Part shown: positions 1,114 through 60,177 of the stretch, in pieces
Layout: the number at the start of each line of letters is the position of its first letter
Numbering within the stretch: the stretch's first letter is position 1
Origin: Octopus bimaculoides
Taxonomy: Eukaryota
DNA: 64,000 nucleotides
Assembly (NCBI RefSeq): GCF_001194135.2
Contig: NC_068991.1
Coordinates: 42,784,939-42,848,938 of the forward strand
Direction of reading: 5' to 3'
Made by a program: the position numbers and the translations under genes
The notes under the pieces: generated by a model
Told to the model about the DNA's origin: nothing
The model's database searches: none
What the model saw: only the letters and a program-made list of their open reading frames with translations

Positions 1114-1252
1114 AGGAGCGGTCGTGTGGTAAGAAGCTTGCTTCCCAACCACATTGCTTTGGTTGGCCCGAGGCCATAGTAGAAGACTCTTGCCCAAGGT
1201 GCCACGCAATGGGACTGAACCCGGAACCATATGGTTGGGAAGCAAGCTTCTT
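1114..1252. mobile_element. SINE-A pieces: plus-strand head (1114-1154) fused to a minus-strand copy (1155-1252)
   Basis: tRNA-like head gtgtggtaagaagcttgcttcccaaccacat; the minus copy has the B-box-like ggttcagtccc and the ccttgggcaag core seen in many other copies in the window. Confidence 0.85.
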
Positions 1253-2719
1253 TATTTCTTTTAAATTGCCATAAAGGCATTACACAGAGGGGGACACTAC
1301 AACACATGTGGGGACATATAACAATTAAAAATATAAAAATAAAATATGATATAATGAATGATACATGAAAATGAACATGAAAAACAAATTAAAATATGAT
1401 AACATGAATGATATCTGAAAATGATATTATGAAGAGTGTGCTACTCACCCCACACTGAGTAACACCTCTTGCCACCTCTGGGTCCTAAGTCCTTTTTCTC
1501 CTTCAGTCCAATCCTTTTTCCACTTTCTCCATCACTTAGTGACATCATTCTCTCCGCTATGCATTCATAACTTTTTTCACCAAGGATGGGGTCTTCTAAA
1601 TTTTGTGGTGTCTGTTCTTTCTTTTTCTTTTTCTTTCTTGTGGGAGAAATGGAGTGGGTGGGTTTGGTGTCTGTATGGGGAGGGTGGGTCTGAGTGGTCT
1701 TGGGTGGGATGGAGTTGGACTGGGGTACCACATCATACTCAGTGGTTTTTTTCTTTTTTTCTCTTACTTTTTTCTGCTCTCTGTAACTTTCCATTCTTCC
1801 TCCTTTTCCTCCTTTCCTCTGCCTGTCTTTTCTTCTTCTCTTTTCTCTTTCATATCCACAATTGTTTCCTCAGCCATTGCCCTCTGTAGAGGGCAGTATG
1901 CTCTTATGTAGCCCTTTTGGCCACATTTAAAACAACGTGGTACTCTGCCCTCTACCCACACCCTCAGCACGATTTCCCCCAACATCACCGTCTCTGCCAA
2001 GTTCTCCAGTTGACCCTCCTCCGTCTGAATAATGAGTTCAAGTGTCTTTCCTTTCCACCCTTCTTCTTCCATTTCTGTGGCTTGGAAGACAGCCACCTTC
2101 TCCTTGCTTCCAACAAGGACAGCTGCCGCTACCCAAGCCACTTCTATATCTGGTGGAATTGCTTCTACCCTCACCTTGGAAGTCTTTCTTTCAAGGTATG
2201 TGGGCAGAAGCACTACTTCCTCTGTTTTCACCATCACACTCACCAGCCTCCTCACCTCCTCTATTGTCCTAAGTTGGACGACTATTGTCCCATATCTTCT
2301 TCCTTTGGTTATATACATTATCTCCATTGATCGTTCCCTCAGTGCCTTTTCCACTTCTACCTCCACCTGTTCTGCCTTTTTTCCTTTCAACGAGTACACC
2401 TTATAGGTGATCGATTTCTTCTCCATCCTCTCCATAATTCCTTTGGAAAGTGACAACTTCACATTGCCGCCCACCTTCTGAGCTATCTTCTCATACTTCT
2501 TCTGACCAGCCAAGTCAAGTTCCCTTCGCTTCACCTCCGTGGCTTCAGCAAAACTCCTTGTCTTCAACACTCTGTCCATCTTTATGTCTGCCCTTACCAG
2601 CTCCTCCTCTGATGATGACAACTCAGACCTGTCAAGGTCTGAGTACATCTTCTAAGCAACACAAAAAACTACGTCCGACTCTTACAAAATCCAGACAGCA
2701 AATAACCCGGCGCATGCAC
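1253..2719 (-). mobile_element. ORF1-only non-LTR retroelement (Tx1/L1-like gag, no RT) with 15-bp TSD
   Basis: Flanked by ggaagcaagcttctt at 1238-1252 and 2720-2734. Contains a 71-nt 5' leader, a gag-like ORF, a T-rich 3' UTR and a 3' end ...aaaagaaata. No endonuclease or RT sequence inside. Confidence 0.8.
1764..2648 (-). CDS. gag/ORF1p-like protein, 294 aa, single zinc knuckle; frameshifted basic C-terminal continuation at 1441-1794
   Basis: LRVWVEGRVPRCFKCGQKGYIRAYCP is CX2CX4[H>Y]X4C (1893-1934), preceded by an RRM-like region and followed by a K/E-rich tail. Layout resembles Tx1/L1-clade ORF1p. Confidence 0.7.
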   Translation of the reverse strand: MYSDLDRSELSSSEEELVRADIKMDRVLKTRSFAEATEVKRRELDLAGQKKYEKIAQKVGGNVKLSLSKGIMERMEKKSITYKVYSLKGKKAEQVEVEVEKALRERSMEIMYITKGRRYGTIVVQLRTIEEVRRLVSVMVKTEEVVLLPTYLERKTSKVRVEAIPPDIEVAWVAAAVLVGSKEKVAVFQATEMEEEGWKGKTLELIIQTEEGQLENLAETVMLGEIVLRVWVEGRVPRCFKCGQKGYIRAYCPLQRAMAEETIVDMKEKREEEKTGRGKEEKEEEWKVTESRKK

Positions 2720-2968
2720 GGAAGCAAGCTTCTTGCCACACACATACATGCATCTCAGCTGCTTTCTTGTATACGAGCAAAGCCATTGCTAGAAAGAACC
2801 ACTGAAATGAGTCATTGACATACATACATGCATATATACATACATACATACATACATGCATACATACATACATACATACATGCACACACACACATACATA
2901 CATACATATATACATAAGTATGCACATTCATACATACATGTACACACATACATATATACATACATAAT

Positions 2969-3002
<34 letters not shown>

Positions 3003-4325
3003 CTATCTGTGTTTGTGTGTCTGTGTGTCTATCTGTGTTTGTGTGTCTGTGTGTCCACTTTCACAACTGCCCACCCCTGTTGCTACCACAACCATCACAA
3101 ATACAATTACAACAACTTCAACCAAAGCAAAAAACAACAATAACCACAACAAACTTAGACAAACAATTCTACATTCTATGTGTTTATCCACAGAGAGATT
3201 CATAACAAAACAAAACCCATTTTAATTACAATTTCAGGCAGGGAACTGCTGTAGATCTTTTTCTGCCAACACTGAATTATTATTTCAAAAGCAATGGTGT
3301 TTTGGAATATGATGGAAACAAGGATTTTAAGAGTATCTTTATTCATGTACTGTCGTTTTTTTGTGTTGTCATTGTGTGGCCATTAGTCCATTCTGATTAG
3401 GTAGACCTATGTTATGTAGGTAGTTGGCTGAATAACAAGGTACTGAGGTACTGTACCATAATTCTATATTGCTCCAGATGTACAATGGTACCCTATGATG
3501 AAATTTTATTGTCTGGCTGGCATCTTGTCTTCTTTTCATATAAATTGGATTCAGAACTAAGTTATCTACAGTAGTCAGCCATTTTAAAGAAAACATGTAA
3601 GATTTGAGTTTTGTTTCAAAGCAGTCAAGCAACTGTAGGAAGGTCCTCTCATTGGCTCAATTCTGGTGCAGTGGTGGGGAGAGGGTGTGGTTGGTTAGAG
3701 GGTCTGTTGAGAAGCAGAAAATGTGCATCACCCTTTTACAGTGGAAATTAGATGTATTCGCTCAAAATTTCAGCACCCTTAACTGTAGAGAGCTGTTTCA
3801 TATACCAATTAATCTTTTGTTGGGGAATATCATGTTTGAAAGTATTGTTTGTTACAATATGTCGAGTTTACTGAGGCAGTGGGGCTTACAGAAAATACCA
3901 ATTCTATTTTTTGATAGATATTCAACATCATTGCTGAAATAACTGTGAAATTTAATTTTGCTGTCATAAAAATCAAGTTTGGTATCTATTCAAACTGCAC
4001 TGAATACAGACATTAATTTTTGACTTATAACGAAGGTAATCAAATTAATACCAGTTATCATTCAACCTATCCTCTGCCACACCATTGTCAGTGGCAGCAG
4101 TGGAAGCATCATTTAAAAGATCTAGCAAGCTGCATATTTTTCCATCCTGTTGTGTCTCATCTGTTGGATTCTATGATGAACACGTTTTCCCCCACCTTCC
4201 TTACTAAAACTATATCTTCTGGAATTCCCTGTTAACCAGTGTTTAAAAAAAATTTTTTTTTCAGCAGACATTGATATAAGCATAACTGAAGTACAAATAT
4301 GCCTATGAGATGCAAGCATGGCTAT

Positions 4326-4505
4326 GAGGCACAGTGTTTGTTGTGAGGCACAGCCTTTGTTGTTAGGCACAGTCTTTGTTGTGAGGCACAGCCTTTGTTG
4401 TTAGGCACAGTCTTTGTTGTGAGGCACAGTCTTTGTTGTGAAACACAGTCTTTGTTGTGAGACACACTCTTTGTTATGAGACACAGTCTTGATTGCGAGG
4501 CACAA
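4326..4505. repeat. 19-bp minisatellite, about 9.5 copies
   Basis: Unit gaggcacagtctttgttgt; units 2-3 are repeated exactly as units 4-5. Confidence 0.95.
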
Positions 4506-5598
4506 GAATGGCTTTGAAGTGAAGGCATGGCTGTTAGACAAGCTATGTAATTTATTATGAATGCTAAGAATATTTTTCTGAATGCTATTACGAATTCTAG
4601 AGGATCTCTTTACATGCAGTATAAAAACCTTGCTATTTGAATCAATGAGGTTAAGCATCAGTACTTGACCTAACACAATAAAAGATTGGTAAAACAATAC
4701 CAAAAAAACATGAGAATACCATACAATAATGTCATGCTACTTTCTAAAGTTGAGTGTTGAGACTGCATCACTTAGCTAGTAAAGAGAAGATTCCTTCCTT
4801 AGTTTTATTTCCTTATCACAGCTTCTGTCTAATAAATTTGTTTTTTAACTCTCTATAGCTTTGCCATCTCTTAGTTCTATTATTTCTGTATGTACACATT
4901 TTAGTTTAATGTCAAATAATATTGGGGAGAAGTTATATTTTTTTCTTTTTCAATCTCTATCTGTTTATTTATTTTTATTCATTCTATGTCATCAAATGTA
5001 TTGCTGTGCATATGGGATGATGATTTTATGGGTTCTGGTTGTCTTCTTCTGAAAACATTTATAATGAAATTGACACACAACATATATGTATGTACACACA
5101 CACACGTACACACACACACACACACACGTACACACACACACACATGTATACTCTATACACTATTTGCAGAAATTATCACCATATAGAAGTTACCCAAAAC
5201 TCATTTATTTCTCTGCTAATCTTGAAAAGTATTAAAGGGGAAAAATAAGACATTAAATGCTGCTGCTGCTGCTGCTGCTAATGGTGATGATGATGATGAT
5301 GATGATGCTGATGAAAAGTAAAGGTGGGCAGGAATATCAAATTTGAATCTGTAAGCAGTGCCAAATGTTAAGAATTAGGATTCCTTTTCATTGGTCAGAA
5401 AGAATTTTTGGAACTCTTACATATTACTATTTTTCATATCTGACTTTGAATTCTTTGCAACAAAAAAATAATGTTTATATCGTTAGACTTGAATTTAGAT
5501 CTATGAGACATTCCTATAAGTGCTGAATATATAACAATAAATACTGCCACTGTTGCCACCATCACTTCCACTACTGCTGCTGTTACTGCTGCTGTTAT

Positions 5599-5681
<83 letters not shown>

Positions 5682-5707
5682 GTAATAATAATAATAATCA
5701 TAATAAT

Positions 5708-6800
<1,093 letters not shown>

Positions 6801-8389
6801 ATATATTCACTAATCACAGTTGTAACCAAATTTGTATAACATGTTAATCTCTACATTACTTGTTATCCTGTGATTTTTTTTTACTCCTTCACAGTCTCGA
6901 GAATCAATCACATCAGCTACCACACTCTAATGATATTAATTGAACTATAATTTCTGTTTCTTTGGAGAACTATTGTCCAGTTTTTTTTTTTCTGTCCTTT
7001 AATCAGTTGTGACAATCCATAAATATTATTGTTAATAATCCATTAATCACATCACTTTCCAGAATTATTCTACAATTTAATCTCCAAAGCATTTGTAATT
7101 CACTGACCTTTATACAGCAATATCCTCGAATCAATTACATTTCAAGCCACTGTTATTTTCATACAATAAATACAAGACACTAAGACACAACTGCTGATCA
7201 TGCTTTTTGAAGCTTCTTGTGGAAACCAATGGAAAACTAAACTGCAGTTATTTTCATCAGCTTTTATTTTACCAGAATTGATTAATAGGCAGATGATTCT
7301 TTCTACTTGCTAGAGGTGTATCATCATCATCATTATTATCATTGTCATTGGTGTCATCATCAGCATCATCACCACCATTGCCACCATCATCACCACTACT
7401 GCTATAGCTGTCACAGTCAACACCACCACCATCATTGTCCACTTTTTTGCTTGCTTTTGCATGCTGGCATGAGTAAGACAGGCCATCACTTTTCAAGTCA
7501 GTTCTTATTTGGAGTTACTGTCTCCCTAGATTGATTAGAGGACCATATGTTGCTTGTCCATTCTAGTTTTGGTTTAGTTTCCATAGCTGAATGTTCTTTA
7601 TATCACCAATCACTTTACAGAGTGTACTATCTATATTTCGTTGTGGTACCAACACTAAAGAAAATATGTCCTTGGAAAGACCAAAGAGTCTTCTCATCTG
7701 TTCATTACTTCTATTCATTCACTAACCACATTACAGAGTGTACTGAGTGCATTTTATGGTTGCACCAGCACTAATGAGGTTGTCTTGTACCCTGCAAGAC
7801 TTAAAGAACCATTTCTATTCTATGTTGTCTCTGTTAATTCAAAACAATATGACTAAGCGGGTGAGTAGAAAAGAGAGGGATGATAGAAGACAGATAAACT
7901 AGGGTGAGACAATGAAAGAAAGAAGAGTGAATGGGGATGGATAAGATAGTAGAGGAAGAAATGATGAAGAGACAGTGCTGAGAGAGTGGAGTAATCATGG
8001 GAGAGATAGTAGAAACAGGTAGTAAAGGCAGCTACATATTTGGTGATAAGAGAGAGAGAGAGAGAGAGAGAGAATGATGGATGCTGATAACAAATGAACT
8101 GGAGGAAAGGAAGTNNNNNNNNNNNNNNNNNNNNNNNNNNNNNNNNNNNNNNNNNNNNNNNNNNNNNNNNNNNNNNNNNNNNNNNNNNNNNNNNNNNNNN
8201 NNNNNNNNNNNNNNNNNNNNNNNNNNNNNNNNNNNNNNNNNNNNNNNNNNNNNNNNNNNNNNNNNNNNNNNNNNNNNNNNNNNNNNNNNNNNNNNNNNNN
8301 NNNNNNNNNNNNNNNNNNNNNNNNNNNNNNNNNNNNNNNNNNNNNNNNNNNNNNNNNNNNNNNNNNNNNNNNNNNNNNNNNNNNNNNNN

Positions 8390-8423
<34 letters not shown>

Positions 8424-8859
8424 AATGAAATATAGTAGTAGTAATGGGTGATGGTAAGAGAGAGAGAATGATGGATGCTGATAACAAATGAACTGGAGGA
8501 AAGGAAGTGGAGGGTATAATTGCAGAAAGATAATTGTAATTAATATAACTTGGTTCAATGCATTCAGTATGTTAGCATTGATCTTAGCATCTTATTTTGT
8601 AAGTTTGAAGACTGAGAATATTTTATGGCTGGTGAATTGGCAGAGTTATTAGAGTGTTGGACAGAATGGTATCTGTTTCAGCTCTCTGTCCCTGAGTTCA
8701 AATCATGCCATGGTGAATTTTAGGGATAACTTCCACCTTTCTACCAACCAGTCTTGGAGGCCCTGTAAAAGATCATGGCTACTACTCTTGCCTCCTGACT
8801 AAAAATTTAAAAGTTAAAAAAAGAAAAGAAAAATCTGTTACTTAAATGAATGTAGAGTT

Positions 8860-9570
8860 AGGTTTTCTGACCCAAAGAAGAGCGAGATAGAAATGCACAG
8901 ATATGAAGTTTGCTTGTCGCTTCTTCTCCATAATCAGACCAATCTATTTCTTGACCATATTGTAACTTGCAATGAAAAGTGGATTCTGTACAATAATAAA
9001 AAACGTTTTTCACACTGGTTGGACCAAAATGAAGCACCAAAAACCTTCCCTAAACCCAAGTTCTTCAAAAAGAAGGTTATGGTGACTATTTGGTGGTGTA
9101 CTACTGGACTCATCTACTATAATTTCTTAAAACCTAGAAAAACCATAACTGCAGAAACATTGCCATGAAATTGCCAAAATGAACAAAAATCTGTTACTCC
9201 TCTATCCCAGACTAGTCAATAGAAGAGGGCCAATCATTCATCATGACAAGGCTCAATCACACGTTTCACTAATGATGCTTATTCCTCAGACCTTTCTCCT
9301 ACCAACTACCACATTTTAAACACCTTGATGGTTTCCTGCAAGAGAAAGAGTTTAAAAATCAAACCAATGCTGAAAGTGCATTCACAGAGTTCATCAGCTC
9401 CAGAACACAAGATTTTTATGTTACTGGAATAAACAAACTTGTAACTCATTGGCAAAAATGTGTTGATTGTAATGAAACTTATTTTGATGAATAAAATTTC
9501 CACATTGTTGAAATATATTGCGCTGAATTTCATGTTTCAAAACGTTGTTTACTTTTTACTCAGTCTGATA
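8860..9570 (+). mobile_element. mariner (DD34D-type) transposase fragment, 5'-truncated, with right-end remnant
   Basis: IVTCNEKWILYNN...KKVMVTIWW (ORF 8893-9168), YSSDLSPTNYH at about 9279, internal deletion before it, terminal-like actttttactcagtctgata at 9551-9570. Confidence 0.85.
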
Positions 9571-13544: not shown

Positions 13545-15584
13545 TTACTGAAATGATTCATGATTGTTGCCATATGATGCCCTATGACATTTAAGCCCAG
13601 CCAAACTTTTACACCTTTTATTACATACTAGACAACTGTACTGGCTGGCAGGAGAAATAGGTACCACCATATGCACTCTCTTAACATGCCTTGTTAGACC
13701 TCCAACTAAGAGGCACACTCTTCCACATTTTACACACGTTCTGTTATGAATTTTAATAGGCACATCATTGTTTATCATGGGTCGATTTCTATGAGAATTT
13801 TGATGGCTCACCAGGCCTGCATGACTCAAACACCCCCACCCACAAACCACACACATAAAAAGCAACACTCTCTCACTTTCCACTGGTTCCCCCCTGCTAA
13901 GCCCCCTCCTAATTCTCTCATACTTAACTCTCTCTCTCTCTCTCTCTCAAACCTTGAACAATCATCATGCACTATCTTCCTCTATCCATCACTGTCTTGT
14001 ACCTCCCTCTCCCAATTACCAGCTGCAATTTCTGTCTGTATTAGAGCATTTTTAAGGCAATCTTTAAACCTTAGTTTAGGCTTATGTGCTAGTCTCCTGT
14101 TATCTTCCAGCACACCATACAATAGCTGCTTGGGCAGTTGCTCATCACTCATCCTTATCAAATGTCCCCACCATCTCAAACGTCTTTGCAAAATCATTGA
14201 CTCTATACTTCTACTGCCACTCCTCTCAAGCACCTCTACATTACTAATGACCATTTTCCAGTTTATCCCCAAAATTTTTCTCAGACAGTATTGCTGACAT
14301 CGTTCCAATTGCCTTACCTACCTACGGTAAACAACCCATGCCTCACTCCCATTTAGCAAAGATGGGAGGATGCATGGTTATATACCTTAACTTTAATTTG
14401 TGAAGATATATTATGTTGTTTCCATAGATATCTATCAAGCCTGCCAAAAGCACTACTAACCCTGCTGATTCTGTATGAAATTTCATCAAGACCAGCAGTG
14501 CTCAAGGTCCTAAATAAATAAATCTAGGTACAGTCTCCAACCTTTGACCATTCACAGTTATAAAAGGTTTCACATACATCTTGGAGGGAGTGCGCTGGTA
14601 CATTATAACAGTTTTTTTAGATTAATTGTAAGACCCAATGCTGCACATGCTGCAGAAATCGCATTCACCATGTGCTGCATATCTTTCTGAGAATGTGGTA
14701 ACAGGTCAAAATCATCTGCATACAGAAACTCAACAAGGTGAGAATGCAGAACTTTTGTTCTATATCTTATATAGACCCCTTCAGAGCAATCTTTAAAAGC
14801 CATTTGAAAATCTATTGCGAAATATATAGCAAACAGTGTAGGAGCAGGAATATCACCTTGCTTTACACCATTTTCTACAGAAACTGGATATGATAAGGTA
14901 CGTCATTCTTATTTCCATCTTGTCATGAAATTGTCTAAGCATTCTCACAAATTTTTCAAGGCACCCTAGCTTTTTTAGGATCTCCCAAAGTGCAATTCTA
15001 TTGATAGAATCAAACGCTTTTGTTAGATCAATGAAGACCTGGTATAAGTACATATCCTGTTCGATGCACTTCTCTTGCAACTGTCTAGCTGAAAATATCA
15101 TATCCATAGTACTCCTACTATCCCAAAACCCACATTACGATTCTGCTAGAACCTCATCAGCAATGTGCAGAAGAAATCTATCCAGCATTACCCTACAAAG
15201 GACCTTTCCAGCAACAGCTAACAGACAGATGCTGCGATAATTATCACAGACATCCTTTCCACCTTTAGATTTATATAGTATCTCCATAGTTGCTTCACGC
15301 CAATCCGGAGGAACCTCTTCACTTTGCCAAACCCTCTAAATCACATCCATCAACATTGCACAAAGATGATCACCACCATATCTATATATCTCTGCACCTA
15401 GTCCATCCATACTAGGGCCCCTTCCATTGTTCAATTTCCTGATTGCTGCTTTTATTTCAGCCAGGTTTGGAACTTCTGCTGTAAGATGTTTTATTGGTCT
15501 CTCAGGTATATTATCAAGAAAAGAGATCAACTTCAGTAGGTCTATTGAGCAACTCATCAAAATGTTCCTTCCATCTCCCAACAA
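13545..15584 (-). mobile_element. RTE-clade LINE, 5'-truncated (about 2 kb): RT through C-terminus with two C2H2-like fingers
   Basis: DMIFSARQLQEKC...FIDLTKAFDSINR, EFLYADD, RFIYLG, RRLRWWGHLIRM, then CVKC...HVKRVH and CLVC...H. Several frameshifts. Confidence 0.92.
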
Positions 15585-16031: not shown

Positions 16032-18069
16032 AGTTGTGTTGAAAAATACTAACAAATCAATGCTGTTAGCTCATAAAAACACTGCCAAATACAAGAAAGC
16101 TTTTGATAGTACGAAATCTGCTATTAAATTAGATTCATTTAATGTTAAAAAACAGATGATACATTAAATGAAAAAGTAGCTAAGGCAGACTTGCTACTAA
16201 CAGGTTATGTTGCTGAACATCACATACCTTTCATCCATATAAATCACTTAGCTAAAATTTGGAAAAAGGCCTTTCCCAATAGTGAAATAGCTAAAAATCT
16301 ACAAATGAAAAAAACAAGATTACCACACATTATGCAAGACAGAATTGCACATTATGAACAAAATGAAATCTTGGAAATTCTCAAGAAACTAAAGTTTTGC
16401 AGTATTGATAGATGAGAGTATGGACATCTCAGTGACACAAATCTTAGCAATAGTTGTTCACTTTTTTTGATGAACAATAGCCTAATGTCAAGGATGCTCT
16501 GCTGGATACAATTGTAGTAGAAAATGGTTCATCTCAGGGTTTGTATGATGCTATCAAGTCTACGCTTACAAAAGAAGATGTATCTATGAGCAACATACTT
16601 GGATTTACCAGCGATGATTGCTCAACATTGATGGGTAACATGAGTGGGTTTCAAAAATTATTGAGAAACAATATTCCAACTGTATTTACAATAGGCTGTG
16701 TTTACCATTCGTTTGCACTTTGTTCAAGTCATGCAGTGAAGGTGTTACCTTCGTATCTCAGGTCCTTTTTAAAGGACTTAACTTCTTCCTTTTCTCAAAG
16801 TAGCAAATGTCAAAATGACTTCAATATGATACAAAGTATTGTTAGCACAAAAGAAAACAAGATTCCAAAGCTTTTGCAAACTGGATGGTTGTTGCGTGAA
16901 AATGTAATTAACGCTATAATAGAACAGTGGGATGCCCTTGTACTTTATTTTCAGTCAGAGGCTAAAGTAGAAAAAGTGGACAGAGCAAAAAGGATCTATG
17001 AAACAATGATTAATAAATGGACAAAGCACATGTTGCTCTTCTTACATTATATATTAAAGAAAGTAAATGCTCTTTATGTCGAGTTTCAATCAGAACACGT
17101 TCGACTGCATCTGTTGTATACACTCGTATCCAGTGAATATGAAAGTATCCTTAGTTGCTTTATAAAAGAGGATGTTTTAGCTGTATCTAAATTATCAGAT
17201 ATTGATCTTAATAACACAGCAAATCACAAAGATATGAGTGATATTTACCTTGGTGGACATGCAATAAAATATCTAGAACAAAACCCAATCGTTGGTGACT
17301 CAGCTAAATTCAAAATTGATTGCAAAAGTTTTTTGCGCTTTCCTCTCGATGAAGCTGGAGTGTTTGCCCTCTTAGAAATACTTGATCCAAAAGTAGCGCG
17401 TGGTCTCACTAACTCTTCTCACTCGATAATTCTCTTGACATCAAACTTTCCAGCAATTGCACCAAAAAATATGCTTGATGAGTGGAGATTATTTCTGCAA
17501 TATAAAGATATTCCTGTTTCCTCAAAAAGCATCCCTGAATTCTGGTATTCCATACACAATCTTAAAGACGGGCTTGACCACTCTAAGTTTGAGAGACTGT
17601 CACAATTCATGACTAATGTAACGGTATTACCTCATTCATTAGTGTGCGTGAAGTGCATATTTTCCCAAATAAATTGCATAAAGACAAAGTGCACTAACAG
17701 GTTGAAGGCCAAAATGATCACTGACCGTCTTCTCGCTAAACAAGCAATTACAAGAAAGGGAGCGTCACACATTTCTTGGGAGCTGAACGCTAAACTTATT
17801 AAAGATGTAGTGGATGAGTCTTGTCATCGTAGATTGAACTTTAAAAAGGAAGGAGTGAATGAAGATGATGTGGATATGTACAAAATTGACAATTAGCTGC
17901 CATATGATATAAAGTATTAAACTCTGTATTCATTTTGTCATATAACATATTTTATCATTAAATTACCAATTATATACCTATTTTCCAACATCTGGGTTTA
18001 TAAAATAGGATCTGGGCTTTTTGCAGCAAATAATCTGGGTGTTTTATTATTTGATGAGTGACAACCCTG
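16032..18069 (+). mobile_element. hAT-superfamily DNA transposon, left end missing
   Basis: Transposase remnants from about 16036, right terminus gagtgacaaccctg at 18056-18069 (CAGGGTTG.. on the minus strand), three subterminal atctggg motifs. Confidence 0.85.
16541..17896 (+). pseudogene. hAT transposase (RNase H-like core plus hATC dimerisation region), 451-aa open segment; upstream part in 16191-16415
   Basis: Frameshifted DES motif near 16410, FTSDDCS, GCVYHSFALC, QTGWL, PEFW, LPHSLVCVKCIFSQIN. Several family-conserved residues are substituted. Confidence 0.85.
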
Positions 18070-33956: not shown

Positions 33957-35335
33957 AAAAAAAAAGAAGAAAATATAACCTGGGGTTGATTCATTTGACT
34001 AAAAATTCTTCAAAGCAGTGCCTCAGCATGGCCACAATCTAATGACTGAAACAAGTAAACAATAAAAAAGAAAAGATAGAGTAAGCAATTATCCTAATTT
34101 TGCTAATTATAAGGTTGTACCACCTCCAAGAATATTTTAGCAGCTTCTGGAAAACCATGCCATGACACATCTGTCAAACCATCTAATCCATGCTGGTGCA
34201 GAAGACGGACATTAAAAATGATGATCCTCCTCCTTTACCTCTGAGAAGCTGAACTGTGTCTTCTAGATAAATGACTTAATTATACTAGCTCGAGATTTAA
34301 CCATTTATCTGGCCCAAATATTCTACCTGTTTTATGTTCAAACTAGCAAGATTCATCCTCTCACACCTAAAATAAACAATCATATTGTAGGTGGTGTGGT
34401 TGTGTGGCAAGAAGTTTGCTTCTTGACCATATGGTTTCAGGTTCAGTCCCACTGTGTGGTACTTTGGGTAAGTGTCTCTTATTATAACCTCAGGTCAACC
34501 AAAGCCTTGGGAGTGGATTTGGTAGATGGAAACTGAAAAAAGTCTATCACATACATGTGTGTCTTTGTGTTTCTGTTTGTCCCCAGCCACTGTTTAACAA
34601 CTAGTGTTGGTGTGTTTATATCCCTGTAACTTAGTGGTTCAACAGAAGAGACCAATAGAATAAGTATCCAGCTTTAAAAGTATAAGCACCGGAGTCGACT
34701 CGCTTAACTGAAAATTCTTTAAGGCAGTACCCTAGCATGGCTACAGTTTGATGATTGGAAAGAAAAATAAAATAAAAGGACATCATAAAAATTTTGAAGC
34801 TACAAATAATACATGATTAGTTCAAAACAAGGGGAATTACAGAGTAATCTGAACGCTAAAGTGTTAAACTTTCAATGTTCCAAATTATAAGGGGGGGGGG
34901 GCAGTACGTGTGCATGAGAGAGAAAGACAGAGGCAGAGAGAGATTTTTGCATTTGGATAATTTGAAAAGTCATAAAATCATCTGAATAATTCTATCATAG
35001 GTTGAATGCATTTGCTTCCTCTTCCGTTGGTTCAGTGAAGCCCAGTGCCACCATGTCTTTCTCTACAACAGATCACCCACCCATGACTCAATACCACCCA
35101 GTTTTAACACTATCACCTGATCAATGGGTACCTTTAGTAGAATCCACTTTAAGTATTCAAACATGATCCCTGGTTCCTACTCTACCCACATTTTCAGTAG
35201 GCATTAAACTGGAGAGGATCATCCACAACAATTTAATGAGTCAAGGAGAATTCTGGTCCTCTTCTCTTGACTATACTCTACACATTTTTACTGCCTCACA
35301 TTCTACCATTCTACATACAATATATATAAATGTTA

Positions 35336-35974
35336 AGGTGGCAAGCTGGCAGAAACGTTAGTACACTGGGCGAAATGCTTAGCGGTATTTCGTCTACCGC
35401 TACGTTCTGAGTTCAAATTCCACCGAGGTCGCTTTCATCCTTTTGGGGTCAATTAACTAAGTATCAGTTACGCACTGGGGTCGATATAATCAACTTAATC
35501 CATTTGTCTGTTCTTGTTTGTCCCCTCTGTGTGTAGCCCCTTGTGGGTAGTAAAGAAATAAGAAACGTTAGTACGCTGGGTTAAATGCCTAGTGGTATTT
35601 CATCTGTCTTTACATTCTGAGTTCAAATTCTGCTGAGATCAGCTTTGCCTTTCATCCTTTTTTTTGGGGGGGGGGGTCGATAAATTAAGTACCAGCTGTG
35701 TACTGAGGTTGATCTAATCGACTGGCCCCCTCCCCCAAAATTTTGGGCCTTGTGCCTAGAGTAGAAAAGAATATATATATATATATAAATGTTAAGGCGG
35801 CGAGCTGGCAGAAACATTAGCACGCCGAGTGAAATGCTTAGTGGTATTTCGTCTGTCTTTATATTCTGAGTTCAAATTCCACCGAGATCGACTTTGCCTT
35901 TCATTCTTTCGGGGTTGATAAATTAAGGATCCCCTTCCCAAAAATGTTGGGCCTTGTGCCTAGAGTAGAAAAGA
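35336..35974 (+). mobile_element. Three SINE-B units stacked head to tail
   Basis: Heads aggtggcaagctggcagaaac (35336) and aggcggcgagctggcagaaac (35795), internal restart at 35561, B-box gagttcaaattc in each, flanked by three copies of atatatataaatgtta. Confidence 0.92.
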
Positions 35975-36104
35975 ATATATATAAATGTTAGATGTCTAAG
36001 TTATAACTTTCTATCCAATAGTATGACTGGTGTGTAATTGATCAGTGAAGTATTATAAAATATTTGGGTTTCATGCTTCAGGACTTTTACAGGCATGAAT
36101 ACGT

Positions 36105-55200: not shown

Positions 55201-56739
55201 CGTGAATGAATTTAGTATATGAAAAACTGAAAAAAGCTTGTCATATGTATTCATGTGTGTATTTTCTTGTCTTGATATCATACAATAGTTATAAGTAATT
55301 GTCACCATAATTCAAGAGATGGCCTTTATTTCCAATTTTCTGTGTAAACAAGTCCAACCATGGGGAAATATGGCCTTGCTTGGAAACAGGCAAGGGCTGG
55401 TGACAGCAAACACATCCAGTTTTTCATCTGTCATGACTATGTGACATGTGGCCAACCAATACAAGTCACCATCCCAGCCGGATCCTCTGAGAAGTGAACA
55501 TGATATGCAAGATCCAACTTATAAAATTGAGCAACATGAGCAAACAGTCTGAGCTGATGCTCCCAAATCATACAAGTAACAGGATGCATCCCAATTTGAG
55601 TATAGTTATTCTTAACTCTATGCTCCAAATAATAGATGGTGGTGGTTGTTGCAGTTTAGCCCAGCTTAACTATTTGATGAAAAGGTGTTCTAATTGGGAT
55701 CATCTGGTCTTTTTGTATAACAAGGCTTACACCAGTTCAATGTATATCTATTTAAGACAACAGGCATGATTTGAAGGGGATATGGCTATCAGTTCCAGCA
55801 GGCCAAGCAACTATATAGAGGCAACCTCTACATGATTGATTTAATAAGCCATCAATCACTTCAATGCTAAGTTTATCATTCACTATAATCACATCTTAAT
55901 ATTCAGAGCATTAGGTACGAATAACTGTGAAATATGTTTTCTATAGGAAAACAGAATTTAAATAGTAGTCATATTCCAGAATAACAATAAAAAGGATTTC
56001 TTACTTTGACATAAGATTACAATTTCACAAATGAGAATGTGTGATATTCATGCCTTATCAATGGAACTAACAGCACATGTGAGCTACAGGTGAGTATTGA
56101 AATCAAGTTGTAAACTTCATTAGGAGAGAATTTACATCCATTCCTTTATCAAAAAACAACTTAATATTCATTTTCACATCATGTTATGGACAGGACAGGT
56201 CTTACATGATTTGATATTTCATTTCAGGTGGCAAGCTGGCAGAATCGTTAGTGCTCTGGGCAAAATGCTTAACGACATTCTGTTTGTCTCTATGTTCTGA
56301 GTTGAAATTCTGCCAAGGTCAACTTTACCTTTCATCCTTTTCAGGTTGATAAATTAAGTGCCAGTGGAATGCTGGAGTCAATATAATTGACTAGTCCTTT
56401 CCCCAAAAATTTCAGGCCCTGTAACTTTAATAGAAAGGGTTATTTGATATTTCATCATGGTCCACAAAATTTGGCACACACAGCAACAGAAGACTAGCTA
56501 ACTTTGTTGTTGTGCTTGGCTTAAAATGTGGACTTTTATCATACCATTCTGCATTGAAGAAGTTGTCAGAAGTTAGACTAGAATCCTTTCTATCTGTATT
56601 AGCTCTTACTTGGAATTATTGTCTTCACAGGGCTGGGACACCCCTTCTAACACTAACCACTTTACAGAGTGCACTGGGTGCATTTTATCATGCCACCACA
56701 CTGGCAAGGTCTCTTCTATCCTGTATTGGTTCTTATTTT

Positions 56740-56939
56740 CTTTTATACATTTCAGTCATTTGGCTGCGGCCATGCTGGAGTACTACCTTGAAGGGTTTTA
56801 GTGGAAGAAATTGACCCCAGGACTTATTCTTTGTAAGCCTAGTACTTATTCTATCGGTCTCCCCTGCTGAACCACCAAGCTACAGGGACATAAACACACC
56901 AACATCGGTTATCAAGCGATGGTGGGGGGACAAACACAG

Positions 56940-57012
<73 letters not shown>

Positions 57013-57418
57013 CATATACACTACGGGCTTCTTTCAGTTCCATCTACCAAATCCACTCACAAGGCTTTGGTCAACCCAAAGCTATAGTAGAAGACACTTG
57101 CTCAAGGTGCCACGCAGCAGGACTGAACTTGGAACCATGTGGTTGGGAAGCAAGCTTCTTATTTCTTGATTGCCCACAATGGGCTAAACATAGAGGGAAC
57201 AAACAAGGACAAAGGGATTAAATCAATTACATCGACCCCAGTGTGTAACTGGTACTTAATTTATCAACCCCAAAAGGATGAAAGGGAAAGTCGACCGCGG
57301 CAGAATTTGAACTCAGAACGTAATAGCAGACGAAATACCACTAAGCATTTCATTAGGCGTGCTAACATTTCTGCCAACTCGCTGCCTTAAGCAAGATTCT
57401 TACCAAACAGCGACGCCT
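56740..57418 (-). mobile_element. Full-length SINE-A interrupted in its head by a SINE-B (57161-57388)
   Basis: TSD aagcaagcttctt (57148-57160) / aagcaagattctt (57389-57401); the rest of the host head is at 57402-57418. Confidence 0.92.
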
Positions 57419-60177
57419 GCACATATACCAAGCTTTTGTATTTTTAGATGGGCAGCCTGTGATTGTGGCTTGCAGAATCTATGCTTTGCTTGTATAGTAC
57501 ATTTTTTTGGTGGCAGGTGAATAGGGAGGAGCATATTGTCTATGGTCAAATGCTTTTTACAATAATAATAGTAATGAAAATGATGTAGTAAATAAATAAA
57601 TATGAACACAAAATTATTTATTAAAGAGGAAATAAAAATACATCTATAAAATGTAATGAACTGTTGTTAATTCTTTGTCCTTTTTTAACACTTTTCATAT
57701 TGCTTTGAATGCAAATATAGGTTTTGTGTTTCTGCAAAATTTCAAATTATTACATATTTTTAGGAATTTTTTTATGACTAAATATCCTACTGAGTATTAT
57801 AGTCACTTAAATGCTATGTAAACTGAGGTAATTTGAGCAATGTACCATATTTACAAGCATTGTGCACTACAGCCATTATCTTGTACAAATTAATAAACAA
57901 TGTAGTATCTCACTCAGTATCTCACTTAGTCAGCACATCATAATGTTTGAAGATTTACAATGTATTTGCTCAGTTGAATGTTCCTATAACTTCTATCGAC
58001 TTAAAAATGAGTAGAACTTTATATTCAGCTAAGAAAAAACGATCCATTGCCTGACTGTGTTTCTTCTTTCTGCTCTTGTGGTTTTGCTGATAGCCAGGCA
58101 CTTGTTGTGACCCAAGTGGTTGTCATTCCTCTTTCTGAGGCAATAATTTTAAATATTTTGCCTAATTGTTCCTTCCCAGGGCAACATCTTCTGGAATAAT
58201 TTTCCCATTCATGTTTACCTCTCCAACTACTAACCCACAATCAGATTCAATATTTACAATAACCTCATTTAGTCTAACAAGATATAAAAATTCAAAAGCA
58301 CTGCTTTGAAAATAAAAGAGAATACATTATAGAATATTTGCAACTAGATTTTGAATATGAATAAAATGTTCTGCAGTTCAATGCCTAAGTAAAAACAAAA
58401 TATAAGTATGTGGTCACTTGCCCTACTAGAGAAAGTGATAACATTTTCTTCAACTGTTTTAAATATGAACACATTATACAATGTAACCCTAGATAGATTA
58501 TGTCTGAAAAAAAAAATGAGAGGATGGTCATGGCAAGCATTGCTTTGATCAGGGATGGCAAGATACTAAACAATAACACTGCAGATTTCATGTATATGTG
58601 AAACAATTTAATTTCTTATAGGTTCACACCAAGTTTATGACATACATTTCCAACATGTGCTGAAAGTGCTGGAGAATCAAACTCACACACACATCAAAGA
58701 AACAGAAATACAGATAATGGTCTGTTACTTTAGAGTTATCAGCTGAATAGAACAAAAGCTTTGCAGTTTGAAGAGAGGAGACCAAGCCACTGCCTTAATT
58801 GTAAAGTGAAAAATAGAATTAAAATTACTTTCATCTTTTTTTTTTTCAACTTTTATGTCCCCTTAGATTCTAACACTAGATTTATAAGAGAAGAAAAATG
58901 GGAGATTGTGATATTCAAGCTTTTCCACTGTCTCTTTTTAGAGATATTAGTAGAGCTTCTCCAGTCGAAACCCTATGCATTATCTATCACTTATCTGTTC
59001 ATGTCACGTTCATTAATAATGAAATATGCGATTATAACATTTAATAAAAAATCTTCCACAACTAAAAAGTGATTTAGAAGAACAATGGTTGTTTGTGCCA
59101 TGTCAAAGATCATGGGTTCTAATAGCATTGCATTGTTAATGAGCCTAATTAAACAATAAAATTCACTTTCACTTTATGGTAGAATGGATTGTGAAGATTT
59201 CTCAGAAACAAAGACATGGAATGTATAGAGTAGGAACAGTATAAGTGAAATAACTGCAACCAAGAGTTAAAATGAGAACATTAACTCATTTCACCCAGAT
59301 CACAATCTTAATTTACTGCACATGAATCCACAAATCAGTATCTTAAGTACACAGTTTCAGTGCTTAGAAACTAGTTGGAGATTATAATGTTTGAAAAGTT
59401 CAAGGTATTTAGGACATCATCATCCCCATTTAATATCTAATTTTCCAGGCTTGCATGGGATAGACAGAATTTGTTAAAGCAGCTTTTCTATAGCCAGATG
59501 CCCTTGTTGATGTCAACCTTCACCTGTTTCCAAGCAAGGTAACACTTTGCCATGGCCAGACATGTTTTCATGGAAGGTTGAAAAGGAATGACACCACTTG
59601 TATGAAGGTGACACTTGTTTAACAACCATCATGCAATGTTAACACAAAGAGACACACACATATTTTTTACTGGTTTCAGTCATTTGACTGCGGCAATGAC
59701 AGGACATCACCTTGAAAAGTTTAGTCAAACAAATCAACCCTAGGGCTTATTCTATAGGTCTCTTTTGCTGAACTGCTTGCTAACTTATGGGAAAGTAAAC
59801 AAACCAATACCAGTCATCAAGTGGAGAAAGGGAACAAGCACAAACACAGATATATATATATATATAAATATAAAAATCAAAATCGCTGATGTGGCTGATG
59901 ACAGTACTGCCTGATTGGCACTTATGCCAGTGGAATGTTAAAAGCACATCCGAGCGTGATCGTTGCCAGAACCGCCTCACTGGCCCTCGTGCAGGTGGCA
60001 CGTAAAAGCACCCACTACACTCTCTTTGTAGTGGTTGGTGTTAGAAAGGGCATCCAGCTGTAGAAATTTTGCCAGATTAGATTGGAGCCTGGCGTAGCCT
60101 TCTAGCTCATCAGTCCTCAGTCAAACCGTCCAACCCATGCCAGCAAGAAAAGCGGATGTTAAACAACGATGATGATG

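What the first reader, a model, noticed from the sequence alone, without database searches (positions are those of the whole stretch)
57148..57401. Candidate system: retroelements that target the tRNA-like heads of other SINEs
Seen: a SINE-B is inserted into a SINE-A head with 3' junction aagaaat|aagaagcttgctt, the same host position as the unrelated ORF1-only element (aagaaata|aagaagcttgcttcc, 1238-1253), 56 kb away. A third insert with this tail sits in a SINE-B head (35560). All three AAGAAAT-tail copies I found are nested in SINE heads, co-oriented, with 13-15 bp TSDs starting (A)AGAA; SINE-B copies with other tails are not. Known: Tx1-clade LINEs include sequence-specific families (Tx1L into another transposon, Keno into U2 snRNA, Mutsu into 5S rRNA, Dewa into tRNA arrays). 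Inference: an unseen site-specific LINE uses abundant tRNA-derived SINE heads as a safe harbour, cutting between the A and B boxes and so disabling the host SINE, and carries a half-LINE and a SINE as passengers. The sample is only three insertions.
Basis: partly seen in the sequence, partly recalled or inferred. Interest (0 to 1): 0.85.

Follow-up and report, generated by a model that had tools for sequence, protein, structure and literature searches.

The report
Octopus retroelements that target SINE heads
In octopus genomes, one lineage of L1/Tx1-type jumping genes, together with a short SINE and an ORF1-only element that share its 3' tail, lands far more often than chance at three exact positions in the 5' ends of two other abundant SINE families; this adds a new target to a known class of target-choosing LINEs.

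Summary
The window (an Octopus genome) holds exactly three copies of a ~45-nt 3' tail ending AAAGAAAT. Two are SINE-B variants and one is a 1.47-kb ORF1-only element. All three lie co-oriented in SINE 5' regions with 13-15 bp target-site duplications (TSDs). Two of them sit at the same nucleotide of SINE-A.

I fetched five usable loci from O. sinensis, O. vulgaris and O. bimaculoides, which gave nine more junctions. The tally is now 7 of 12 in three hot-spots: SINE-A position 18 (2), SINE-B position 16/17 (2) and SINE-B position 48/49 (3). Each hot-spot is hit by different element types.
- A uniform model gives p about 1e-11.
- Only 2-19% of sites sharing the first 6-7 bases lie in SINE heads.
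- 0 of 28 ordinary SINE-B tails use these sites.

The "unseen" LINE was found. It is about 5.2-5.3 kb, encodes an APE endonuclease, RT and zf-RVT, and its best solved relative is human L1 ORF2p. It carries the same tail, and one copy sits in a hot-spot.

The targeting is a preference, not strict: 5 of 12 junctions lie elsewhere. The closest precedent is crocodilian Tx1-Mar/SINEU-3 inserting into Mariner-N4_AMi, including tandems that sandwich a TSD. I did not test Tx1 clade membership by phylogeny. A tRNA origin of the heads was not confirmed.

Verdict: a new member of a known kind, of moderate interest.

The parts
57161..57388 (-). SINE-B variant ('SINE-B-long', 228 bp): a SINE-B head and body joined to a ~55-nt LINE-type tail ending ...GTGGGCAATCAAGAAAT. 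This is the insert named in the finding.
   Evidence: The nhmmer tail profile hits 57161-57207 at E 4.6e-11.
57148..57160 (-). 3' copy of the target-site duplication, AAGAAGCTTGCTT
57389..57401 (-). 5' copy of the target-site duplication, AAGAATCTTGCTT (1 mismatch)
57025..57419 (-). Host SINE-A, split at its position 18/19 (..TTTGGT|AAGAA..), directly after the box-A-like motif TGGCTGTGTGG
   Evidence: BLAST hits to SINE-A positions 1-31 and 18-154. The joined flanks align with 12 other SINE-A copies.
1254..2719 (-). ORF1-only ('half-LINE') element of 1.47 kb. Its tail is ...CCTTTATGGCAATTTAAAAGAAAT, followed by one extra A at 1253.
   Evidence: Homologous ORF1-only elements: L001 9457-11055, L003 about 2495-4184, and L004 (3' end at 10668).
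1764..2648 (-). ORF1, 294 aa. Its zinc knuckle is degenerate (CFKCGQKGYIRAYC). There is no Pfam hit, but 316 homologues were found.
1238..1252 (-). 3' TSD copy, AAGAAGCTTGCTTCC, at the start of the host SINE-A remnant (1150-1252)
2720..2734 (-). 5' TSD copy, AAGAAGCTTGCTTCC, preceded by the host SINE-A 5' stub ..GTGTGTGGC
35365..35560 (+). SINE-B-long insert with tail ...GTGGGTAGTAAAGAAAT plus an extra A. Its 5' junction is in register with the host, so the true 5' end could lie anywhere from 35335 to 35365.
35351..35364 (+). 5' TSD copy, AGAAACGTTAGTAC. It shares the diagnostic T of 'AGTAC' with the 3' copy.
35561..35574 (+). 3' TSD copy, AGAAACGTTAGTAC, at the start of the host SINE-B remainder (35561-35772)
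35335..35364 (+). Host SINE-B 5' part (positions 1-30), preceded by the host's own TSD ATATATATAAATGTT
35794..35976 (+). Neighbouring ordinary SINE-B that shares the same outer TSD (ATATATATAAATGTT appears three times), forming a TSD-sandwich tandem

Best explanation
An Octopus lineage of L1-superfamily (most likely Tx1-type) LINEs has a conserved ~45-nt 3' tail, ..TGTCCCCTCT.TGT..GCCCCTTGTGGGTA.TAAAGAAAT.

Its ORF2 protein (APE endonuclease + RT + C-terminal zinc motif) starts reverse transcription exactly at the end of this tail. It therefore also mobilises in trans any RNA that carries the tail. Two such passengers are seen: a SINE-B derivative, and an old family of ORF1-only elements.

Bottom-strand nicking is sequence-selective. 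Preferred sites include ..GGT|AAGAAGCTT.. in the SINE-A head, ..GG(C)|AGAAACGTT.. in SINE-B, and ..AG(T)|GGTATTTCG.. in SINE-B. Second-strand cleavage 13-18 bp downstream produces the TSDs.

The target sequence has a direction, so inserts are co-oriented with the host SINE. These SINEs make up several per cent of the genome, so most good sites lie in their heads. The effect is a 'TE-in-TE' landing pad that splits the host SINE's 5' region.

The preference is partial. Other sites are also used, including re-cutting of a site already occupied by a related element, which builds head-to-tail tandems that sandwich one TSD.

Shown here: the shared tail, the autonomous LINE and its domains, the exact junctions and TSDs, the recurrence of sites, the enrichment, and the contrast with ordinary SINE-B.

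Inferred: that the endonuclease, rather than the RNA or chromatin, reads the site; trans-mobilisation; Tx1 clade membership; any benefit as a safe harbour; and inactivation of the host SINE.
For: 1. Shared tail. It is found in the SINE-B variant, the ORF1-only elements and LINEs across four assemblies.

2. Autonomous element. The L002 unit is 5,281 bp. Its ORF2 (1132 aa) has Exo_endo_phos, RVT_1 and zf-RVT, and human L1 ORF2p is the best PDB match at E 2.5e-71. AAGAAAT-tailed LINEs are at L003 4201-9331 and at L005, ending at 14397.

3. Junction tally. There are twelve AAGAAAT-type 3' junctions in 160 kb.
- H1, SINE-A position 18: 2 (window 57161, window 1254).
- H2, SINE-B position 16/17: 2 (window 35559, L001 11055).
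- H3, SINE-B position 48/49: 3 (L003 648, L004 9529, L005 14397).
- TSDs are 13-18 bp where both copies are seen, and all seven inserts are co-oriented.
- Each hot-spot is hit by different element types (SINE, ORF1-only element, LINE, or a 75-nt 3' fragment) with different flanks, so the events are independent.

4. Statistics.
- At least 7 of 12 in co-oriented heads: p about 1e-11 under a uniform model.
- Only 2.0-8.4% of sites sharing the first 6 bases, and 9-19% sharing the first 7, lie in the SINE-head context.
- Control: 0 of 28 ordinary SINE-B tails versus 7 of 12, Fisher p = 4e-5.

5. An off-target mimic. The L001 6163 insert lies in the body of a reversed SINE-B at T|GGTACTTCC. This matches the H3 site T|GGTATTTCG at 8 of 9 bases on the insert's strand. 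That points to sequence reading.

6. TSD-sandwich tandems are seen for SINE-B, ORF1-only elements and LINEs. Kojima 2015 (PMC4494074, section 14) describes the same signature for target-preferring Tx1/SINEU-3.
Against: - The sample is still only 12 junctions from 160 kb. Five loci were chosen because they carry a related ORF1. The junctions themselves were not selected for nesting.
- Five of 12 junctions are outside the hot-spots.
- The three hot-spots share no single consensus. At best there are two motif classes.
- No endonuclease activity or specificity was measured.
- The host 5' half was not found for the L005 insertion.
- No conserved RNA structure was detected in the tail, so how the RT recognises it is unknown.
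- Tx1 clade placement rests on domain architecture and a published repeat census, not on a tree.
Confidence: 0.6

Rival explanations
1. There is no real targeting. A relaxed L1-like nick preference, plus a few bases of pairing between the nicked DNA and the AAGAAAT tail, multiplied by the sheer abundance of SINEs, produces apparent hot-spots. Alu-in-Alu hot-spots made by human L1 are the model.
For: - Four of the 12 TSDs begin (A)AGAA, which resembles the tail end.
- Three of the non-SINE targets follow a T-run (TTT|A.. or TTT|C..), as at L1 sites.
- SINE-A and SINE-B cover about 5% of the sampled DNA, and SINEs make up 11.6% of O. vulgaris (PMC13282606).
Against: - Only 2% of AAGAAG and AGAAAC sites, and 8% of GGTATT sites, lie in the SINE-head context, yet 7 of 7 insertions at such motifs are there.
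- The second AAGAAGC motif near the 3' end of every SINE-A copy is never used.
- The H3 site starts GGTATTT and has no match to the tail end.
- The full tail is retained at every junction, so priming is not internal to AAGAA.
- Ordinary SINE-B copies in the same DNA never use these sites.
Confidence: 0.07
2. Targeting works through proteins or chromatin rather than DNA sequence. The LINE ribonucleoprotein is tethered to Pol III factors (TFIIIC/TFIIIB) or to an open structure on SINE internal promoters. This would be analogous to Ty3 or Dictyostelium TRE5-A, but cutting inside the unit.
For: - Two SINE families with different head sequences are hit.
- All seven hits are in the 5' promoter-bearing third and are co-oriented.
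- H1 and H3 lie about 31 and about 25 nt upstream of the box-B-like motif. I counted these distances on the sequences.
Against: - Junctions recur to the nucleotide, whereas tethered systems give a window of positions (PMC3706591 discussion).
- The off-target insert at L001 6163 lies in a reversed SINE body at a sequence mimic of H3.
- H2 is about 58 nt from box B.
- Most genomic SINE copies are unlikely to be factor-bound. This last point is from general knowledge and was not tested.
Confidence: 0.15
3. RNA-guided homing. Source copies already sitting in a SINE head are transcribed past their tail into the host SINE. This read-through sequence then pairs with nicked SINE copies elsewhere and fixes the junction, as proposed for R1/R2-type elements.
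For: - The tail has neither a Pol III terminator nor room downstream of its AATAAA for cleavage, so transcripts must run into flanking DNA (read from the sequence).
- Kojima 2015 notes that co-transcription with the target can strengthen target-specific integration (PMC4494074, section 20).
- SINE-B-long inserts in SINE-B have 5' junctions in register with the host, which shows that homology is used at least at the 5' end.
Against: - Each hot-spot is used by two or three different element types, so each would first have had to reach the same nucleotide independently.
- TSD left ends are fixed to within 1 nt, as expected from a defined nick.
- No copy carrying a transduced piece of SINE outside a SINE was seen. 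The sample is small.
Confidence: 0.12
4. The nested structures are not independent insertions. They could be composites copied as units (segmental duplication or retrotransposition of a chimera), or assembly artefacts.
For: - The window contains 1709 N.
- There is an odd inverted SINE-A head at 1115-1154 next to one host.
- Tandem SINE arrays are common.
Against: - Different inserts occupy the same site.
- Host flanks differ.
- TSDs are intact and internal to the host.
- The same sites recur in assemblies of three species made with different technologies.
Confidence: 0.03

Closest known systems
Tx1-Mar LINEs and SINEU-3 in crocodilians, inserted into the DNA transposon Mariner-N4_AMi (Kojima 2015, PMC4494074)
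   Same: - A LINE lineage and a non-autonomous passenger share a target preference for a defined site inside another abundant transposon.
- TSDs are about 16 bp.
- Tandem insertions 'sandwiching a TSD' arise by sequential insertion.
- The degree of preference varies between families (13-90%).
   Different: - The target here is the 5' region of SINEs, which are themselves retroelements.
- At least three sites in two SINE families are used.
- The host is a cephalopod.
- The passengers are a SINE with box A/B-like motifs and an ORF1-only family, not snRNA-headed SINEs.
- The preference measured here (7 of 12) rests on a small sample.
Tx1L inserted in Tx1D (Xenopus), and the other target-specific Tx1 families: Keno (U2 snRNA), Mutsu (5S rRNA), Kibi and Koshi (microsatellites), and Dewa (spacer of tRNA-Leu arrays)
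   Same: - L1-superfamily architecture with an APE endonuclease.
- Repeated sequences are chosen as targets.
- The AAGAAG start of the SINE-A site recalls the (TTC)n/(GAA)n target of Koshi.
   Different: - Clade membership was not tested by phylogeny.
- Dewa targets a spacer, not tRNA-like sequence (PMC3706591).
- None of these families is reported to target SINE heads (PMC4494074, PMC3706591; no other report was found).
Dada DNA transposons inside tRNA and snRNA genes (Kojima and Jurka 2013, PMC3706591)
   Same: Insertion is at exact positions inside Pol III-type small-RNA sequences, in some families within box A (TSD TAGCTC). The rationale is the same: copy number and conservation of the target.
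   Different: Dada elements are DDE transposons with 6-7 bp TSDs, and they target real genes rather than SINE copies.
HAL1 'half-L1' elements of mammals (cited in PMC4494074 as Bao and Jurka 2010) and HeT-A of Drosophila (from my own knowledge)
   Same: These are ORF1-only non-autonomous LINE derivatives that persist as families and depend on an RT supplied in trans.
   Different: - The octopus family carries its own C-terminal extension (PTPPTP..TKPTHS.PTRK).
- Its members are only about 40% identical to each other.
- It shares the partner LINE's site preference.
Insertion hot-spots of L1-mobilised Alu inside Alu and L1 (from my own knowledge)
   Same: These are nested TE-in-TE insertions at recurrent consensus positions.
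   Different: Those hot-spots are explained by the short TT|AAAA nick motif. Here a 6-7-mer does not explain the bias.

Membership tests
L1 superfamily / Tx1 clade LINE | ORF2 with an N-terminal APE-type endonuclease, an RT and a C-terminal Cys/His zinc motif | tested here: met
   L002 6058-9456 has Exo_endo_phos (E 1.9e-15), RVT_1 (E 8.2e-31) and zf-RVT (E 5.4e-9). Human L1 ORF2p is the best PDB match at E 2.5e-71 over residues 3-867.
L1 superfamily / Tx1 clade LINE | Type I ORF1 (RRM plus CCHC knuckle) rather than the mammalian Transposase_22 type | tested here: inconclusive
   A CX2CX4HX4C knuckle is present in homologues P0002, P0004, P0006 and P0007, and zf-CCHC is found in P0087. The window copy is degenerate (H replaced by Y). 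No Pfam RRM hit and no Transposase_22 hit. PMC5203782 says such ORF1s are consistent with Tx1.
L1 superfamily / Tx1 clade LINE | The RT groups with Tx1 reference elements in a phylogeny | not testable with these tools
   No labelled Tx1 or L1 reference set (Repbase) was available, and the homologues returned carry no clade names. Indirect support: L1-Tx1 is the only L1-like class among recently active O. vulgaris LINEs, with 421 insertions covering 2.29 Mb, which is about 5.4 kb each (PMC13282606). The unit found here is 5.28 kb and its copies are 99-99.7% identical.
Target-preferring Tx1-type system (LINE plus passengers) | Insertions are concentrated at defined positions of a repeated target | tested here: met
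   7 of 12 junctions fall in three exact sites of SINE-A/B. Uniform-model p is about 1e-11. Control: 0 of 28.
Target-preferring Tx1-type system (LINE plus passengers) | Tandem copies sandwiching one TSD, made by sequential insertion | tested here: met
   Seen at window 35318-35992, L001 9400-11490 and 18000-18470, L003 2478-4200, and in the L002/L003 LINE arrays. Compare PMC4494074, section 14.
Strictly site-specific LINE (R1/R2/Keno-like) | Nearly all copies lie in one target site | tested here: not met
   Three hot-spots are used, and 5 of 12 junctions lie elsewhere.
tRNA-derived SINE (SINE2), for host SINE-A and SINE-B | The head is recognisably derived from a tRNA | tested here: not met
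   ARAGORN finds 0 genes in the window. Rfam gives no tRNA hit at gathering threshold, nor at E up to 5 over L001 11000-19400, which holds several copies.
tRNA-derived SINE (SINE2), for host SINE-A and SINE-B | Internal Pol III box A and box B motifs at tRNA-like spacing | tested here: inconclusive
   Read by eye on the alignments. SINE-A has TGGCTGTGTGG, then about 30 nt, then GGTTCAGTCCC. SINE-B has GAGTTCAAATTCC as box B and only a weak box A candidate. No promoter model was run.
tRNA-derived SINE (SINE2), for host SINE-A and SINE-B | Short dispersed copies with TSDs and a tail shared with a LINE | tested here: met
   There are 27 SINE-A and 37 SINE-B HSPs in 160 kb. SINE-B tails are homologous to the LINE tail. 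The LINE partner of SINE-A was not identified.
Half-LINE (HAL1-like ORF1-only family) | ORF1 only, LINE-type 3' end, and several diverged copies that share the same architecture | tested here: met
   Copies are in the window (1254-2719), L001 (9457-11055), L003 (about 2495-4184) and L004 (3' end at 10668). They share a C-terminal extension absent from LINE ORF1. They are about 40% identical to each other.

The most novel reading that the evidence does not exclude
The LINE does not read three unrelated DNA words. Instead it recognises a feature common to Pol III-type SINE promoters: the box-A/D-arm-like region, or factors bound to it. It would then be a retroelement specialised to integrate inside, and decapitate, other retroelements' promoters. 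That would be a hyperparasite of SINEs that also carries its own SINE. In the DNA sampled here, which is enriched for these elements, roughly one SINE head in ten is occupied.
Probability: 0.15. Interest if true: 0.75.

Novelty: new member of a known kind. Interest (0 to 1): 0.5.

Why it matters
Target-choosing LINEs are studied as natural models of safe, programmable DNA insertion, and they show how transposons avoid harming their hosts. Known Tx1-type lineages choose snRNA or 5S genes, microsatellites, DNA transposons or LTR elements.

A lineage that chooses exact positions in the heads of SINEs would add retroelement-in-retroelement targeting to that list. It appears to be recently active in octopus, and it carries both a SINE and an ORF1-only family as passengers.

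It would also help explain the dense nested and tandem SINE/LINE architecture of cephalopod genomes. And it offers an endonuclease with two or three defined natural target sequences that can be tested in vitro.

In the sampled DNA about 10% of SINE heads are occupied. That figure is biased upward. If it holds genome-wide, these insertions would be a non-trivial cause of SINE source-gene inactivation and a common source of mis-annotated 'composite' repeats.

Tried and rejected
- ARAGORN and Rfam (gathering threshold, and E up to 5) found no tRNA in the SINE heads. I therefore do not call the heads tRNA-derived on my own evidence.
- Pfam found nothing in the window ORF1 or in eight other long window ORFs.
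- The search for homologous proteins returned only one hit for ORF1, and only the query itself for P0007. The exhaustive HMMER search gave 316 homologues, but none was fused to RT/EN.
- The look-up of encoding contigs failed for the window ORF1 and for P0001, P0002, P0005, P0006 and P0015. L006 is a 2.2-kb Logan contig without a tail.
- RNAalifold on 13 tails gave no convincing conserved structure: -0.54 kcal/mol and 4 pairs. I dropped the idea of a tail stem-loop as evidence.
- The ORF2 homologue search returned no clade-labelled names, so Tx1 versus L1 could not be settled.
- I looked for one consensus around the nick and across all 12 targets by eye and found none, only two motif classes.
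- I noticed a resemblance between the tail (TGTGGGTAATAAAGAA) and the H1/H3 regions. With three sites it cannot be tested, so I do not claim it.
- The host 5' half of the L005 insertion was searched for and not found.
- I did not scan the viral, metagenome or prokaryote collections. They cannot be expected to hold octopus DNA.
Full report
**What the window is**

The sequence is cephalopod DNA.
- The only named relative of the window's 294-aa ORF is an Octopus bimaculoides protein.
- Related loci were recovered from O. sinensis, O. vulgaris and O. bimaculoides assemblies.
- The window holds about 13 copies of a ~155-bp SINE ('SINE-A') and about 14 of a ~170-230-bp SINE ('SINE-B').

**Checking the observation**

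On the minus strand, 57148-57401 reads as follows:
- host SINE-A positions 1-31, ending AAGAATCTTGCTT;
- then a complete 228-bp SINE-B variant ending ...GTGGGCAATCAAGAAAT;
- then AAGAAGCTTGCTT and the rest of SINE-A.

This is a clean insertion with a 13-bp TSD.

At 1254-2719 (minus strand) a 1.47-kb element carries only an ORF1 (1764-2648) and ends ...ATGGCAATTTAAAAGAAAT. It sits at the same SINE-A nucleotide, with a perfect 15-bp TSD AAGAAGCTTGCTTCC.

At 35335-35574 (plus strand) a second SINE-B variant ends ...GTGGGTAGTAAAGAAAT(A), followed by AGAAACGTTAGTAC and the rest of a SINE-B.
- The same 14-mer, including a diagnostic T, lies 197 bp upstream.
- The host is bounded by its own outer TSD ATATATATAAATGTT, so this is a nested insertion.
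- Its 5' junction is in register with the host.

BLAST and a profile search find exactly these three tail copies in the window.

**The three inserts are related**

Their last ~45 nt align..TGTCCCCTCT.TGT..GCCCCTTGTGGGTA.TAAAGAAAT. Even the ordinary SINE-B tail (GCCTTGTGCCTAGAGTAGAAAAGAAT, usually followed by (ATT)n) is a diverged homologue.

**Finding more copies and the autonomous element**

An exhaustive HMMER search with the ORF1 gave 316 homologues. Five of them could be traced to usable genomic loci of about 20 kb each. A sixth look-up returned only a 2.2-kb contig without a tail.

L002 (O. vulgaris) holds three head-to-tail copies of a 5,281-bp LINE that are 99-99.7% identical.
- Copy 1 has open ORF1 and ORF2.
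- ORF2 (1132 aa) has Exo_endo_phos, RVT_1 and zf-RVT domains.
- Its best solved relative is human L1 ORF2p, at E 2.5e-71.
- Its tail is the same module, ending in A-rich repeats.

L003 (O. sinensis) has a near-full-length LINE (4201-9331, two frameshifts in ORF2) ending GTGGGTAATAAAGAAAT. L005 (O. bimaculoides) has another, ending GTGGGCAATAAAGAAAT.

The window itself has no ORF2 of this family.

A 2026 repeat census of O. vulgaris lists L1-Tx1 as the only L1-like class among recently active LINEs. It reports 421 insertions covering 2.29 Mb, about 5.4 kb each (PMC13282606). That fits this element. I could not run a labelled RT phylogeny, so Tx1 membership is inferred.

**The ORF1-only elements are a family**

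Copies in the window, L001, L003 and L004 share a C-terminal extension (PTPPTP..TKPTHS.PTRK) that LINE ORF1 lacks. They are only about 40% identical to one another. This is an old, trans-dependent 'half-LINE' lineage.

**Where the tail lands**

A tail profile finds 15 tails in 160 kb, and 12 of them are of the AAGAAAT type.

| 3' junction class | Count | Events |
|---|---|---|
| SINE-A position 18 (GGT\|AAGAAGCTT) | 2 | window 57161, window 1254 |
| SINE-B position 16/17 (GG(C)\|AGAAACGTT) | 2 | window 35559; L001 11055 (an ORF1-only element, TSD 17-18 bp) |
| SINE-B position 48/49 (AG(T)\|GGTATTTCG) | 3 | L003 648 (SINE-B variant); L004 9529 (a 75-nt 3' fragment, TSD 16 bp); L005 14397 (LINE) |
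| Body of a reversed SINE-B, at T\|GGTACTTCC | 1 | L001 6163 |
| Re-use of a site already occupied by a related element (TSD sandwich) | 2 | L001 18227, L003 4184 |
| Other sequences | 2 | L003 9331, L004 10668 |

The reversed-SINE-B site matches the third hot-spot at 8 of 9 bases.

All seven head insertions are co-oriented. Each hot-spot is hit by different element types, so the events are independent.

**Is it more than chance?**

- Co-oriented SINE-A/B heads are 1.07% of target space. At least 7 of 12 there gives p about 1e-11. The window's 3 of 3 gives about 1e-6.
- The nine junctions outside the window give 4 of 9, which I calculate at about 2e-6 from the same rate. This is an independent replication.
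- Short motifs do not explain the bias. Only 2.1% of AAGAAG, 2.0% of AGAAAC and 8.4% of GGTATT sites lie in the SINE-head context. With 7-mers the fractions are 9-19%.
- Every SINE-A has a second AAGAAGC near its 3' end, and it is never used.
- As an internal control, none of 28 ordinary SINE-B tails lies in these sites (Fisher p = 4e-5).

**Mechanism**

The best-supported reading has four parts:
1. An APE-type endonuclease with sequence-selective nicking.
2. Second-strand cleavage 13-18 bp downstream.
3. Reverse transcription that starts exactly at the tail end. The full tail is kept at every junction, without poly(A) or transduced flank.
4. Trans-mobilisation of any RNA that carries the tail.

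Site re-use produces [TSD]-element-[TSD]-element-[TSD] tandems. These are seen for SINE-B (about 9 of 28 ordinary tails are followed within 6-21 nt by another SINE-B 5' end), for ORF1-only elements and for LINEs.

Kojima (PMC4494074, sections 14-15) describes the same signature for crocodilian SINEU-3 and Tx1-Mar, which prefer one site in Mariner-N4_AMi.

Which component reads the site was not determined. Rivals are Pol III-factor tethering and RNA-guided homing through read-through transcripts. No conserved tail structure was detected.

**What is not supported**

- The targeting is a preference, not strict specificity.
- The heads are not recognised as tRNA by ARAGORN or Rfam. They have box A/B-like motifs only by eye.
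- The SINE-B 16/17 site is not clearly between the boxes.
- Dewa targets a tRNA-Leu spacer, not tRNA genes (PMC3706591).
- 'Safe harbour' and 'disabling the host' are reasonable inferences only. The inserts separate the box-A-like region from box B by 75 bp to 5 kb.

**Novelty**

Target-preferring Tx1-type LINEs with non-autonomous passengers that insert into another transposon family are known. A cephalopod lineage whose preferred sites are exact positions in the 5' regions of two SINE families, with a SINE and a half-LINE as passengers, appears not to have been described in the literature I could search.

I file it as a new member of a known kind, of moderate interest. The main limits are the small sample and the untested biochemistry.

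Noticed in passing
window 35318-35992; window 6285-6600; L001 9400-11490 and 18000-18470; L004 15171-16067: Head-to-tail SINE-B tandems in which the same TSD appears three times ([TSD]SINE[TSD]SINE[TSD]). L004 has five SINE-B copies in a row. About 9 of 28 ordinary SINE-B tails are followed within 6-21 nt by another SINE-B 5' end. The members differ in subfamily, so this looks like sequential re-insertion into the same site rather than duplication.
   Followed up: partly
L002 4445-19184; L003 4201-20850: Full-length LINEs of this family form head-to-tail arrays. The three L002 copies are 99-99.7% identical and copy 1 has open ORF1 and ORF2, so the family looks recently active in O. vulgaris. 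The L003 array mixes subfamilies that are 70-92% identical to the L002 unit. Short TSD-like spacers (CACTGATA / CACCCGAT; CTGAATACTCGTCAT) separate the units.
   Followed up: partly
window 35335-35365; L003 417-480: When the SINE-B variant inserts into a SINE-B, the 5' junction is exactly in register with the host: the host supplies positions 1-30 or 1-61 and the insert continues from the next base. This suggests homology-assisted 5' end joining, or later recombination between the direct repeats.
   Followed up: partly
window 1115-1154 (+), next to 1150-1252 (-): A SINE-A head in inverted orientation abuts the truncated 3' part of the host SINE-A that carries the ORF1-only element, forming a ~40-bp inverted repeat. 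Its origin is unknown; it could be a second insertion, a rearrangement or an assembly artefact.
   Followed up: no
window 56735-56945 (+) with 57025-57419 (-); L002 19330-19997: A third SINE-like repeat ('SINE-C': ..TTCAGTCATTTGGCTGCGGCCATGCTGGAG..) ends in (CA)n and lies tail-to-tail with SINE-A across a (CA)n(TA)n tract. The same arrangement occurs in the O. vulgaris locus, where two SINE-A copies are also separated only by (TA)n. This suggests microsatellite-directed insertion by these families.
   Followed up: no
window 1441-1794 (-); P0002, P0007; L003 2666-4057: ORF1-only elements share a proline/threonine-rich C-terminal extension (PTPPTP..TKPTHS.PTRK) that LINE ORF1 lacks. In the window copy it is cut off by a stop or frameshift, and the zinc-knuckle histidines are replaced by tyrosine, so this copy is probably dead.
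   Followed up: partly
protein P0001 (UniRef A0A0L8GU38, O. bimaculoides): An annotated 'C2H2-type domain-containing protein' begins with about 200 residues of half-LINE ORF1 (82% identical to the window ORF1 in the matched stretch) fused to zinc-finger repeats. It is either a gene-model chimera or an exonised transposon.
   Followed up: no
all tails, e.g. window 35545-35559; L003 9315-9331: The tail contains AATAAA only 5-6 nt before the element's end (GGGTAATAAAGAAAT). Cleavage and polyadenylation would then fall in flanking DNA, yet new copies carry neither poly(A) nor flank.
   Followed up: no
window 14880-15458 (-); window 16541-17896 (+): The first interval is an RT fragment only 25% identical to the LINE ORF2, so it belongs to a different LINE family. 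The second is a 451-aa ORF with no Pfam hit. Neither was examined further.
   Followed up: no
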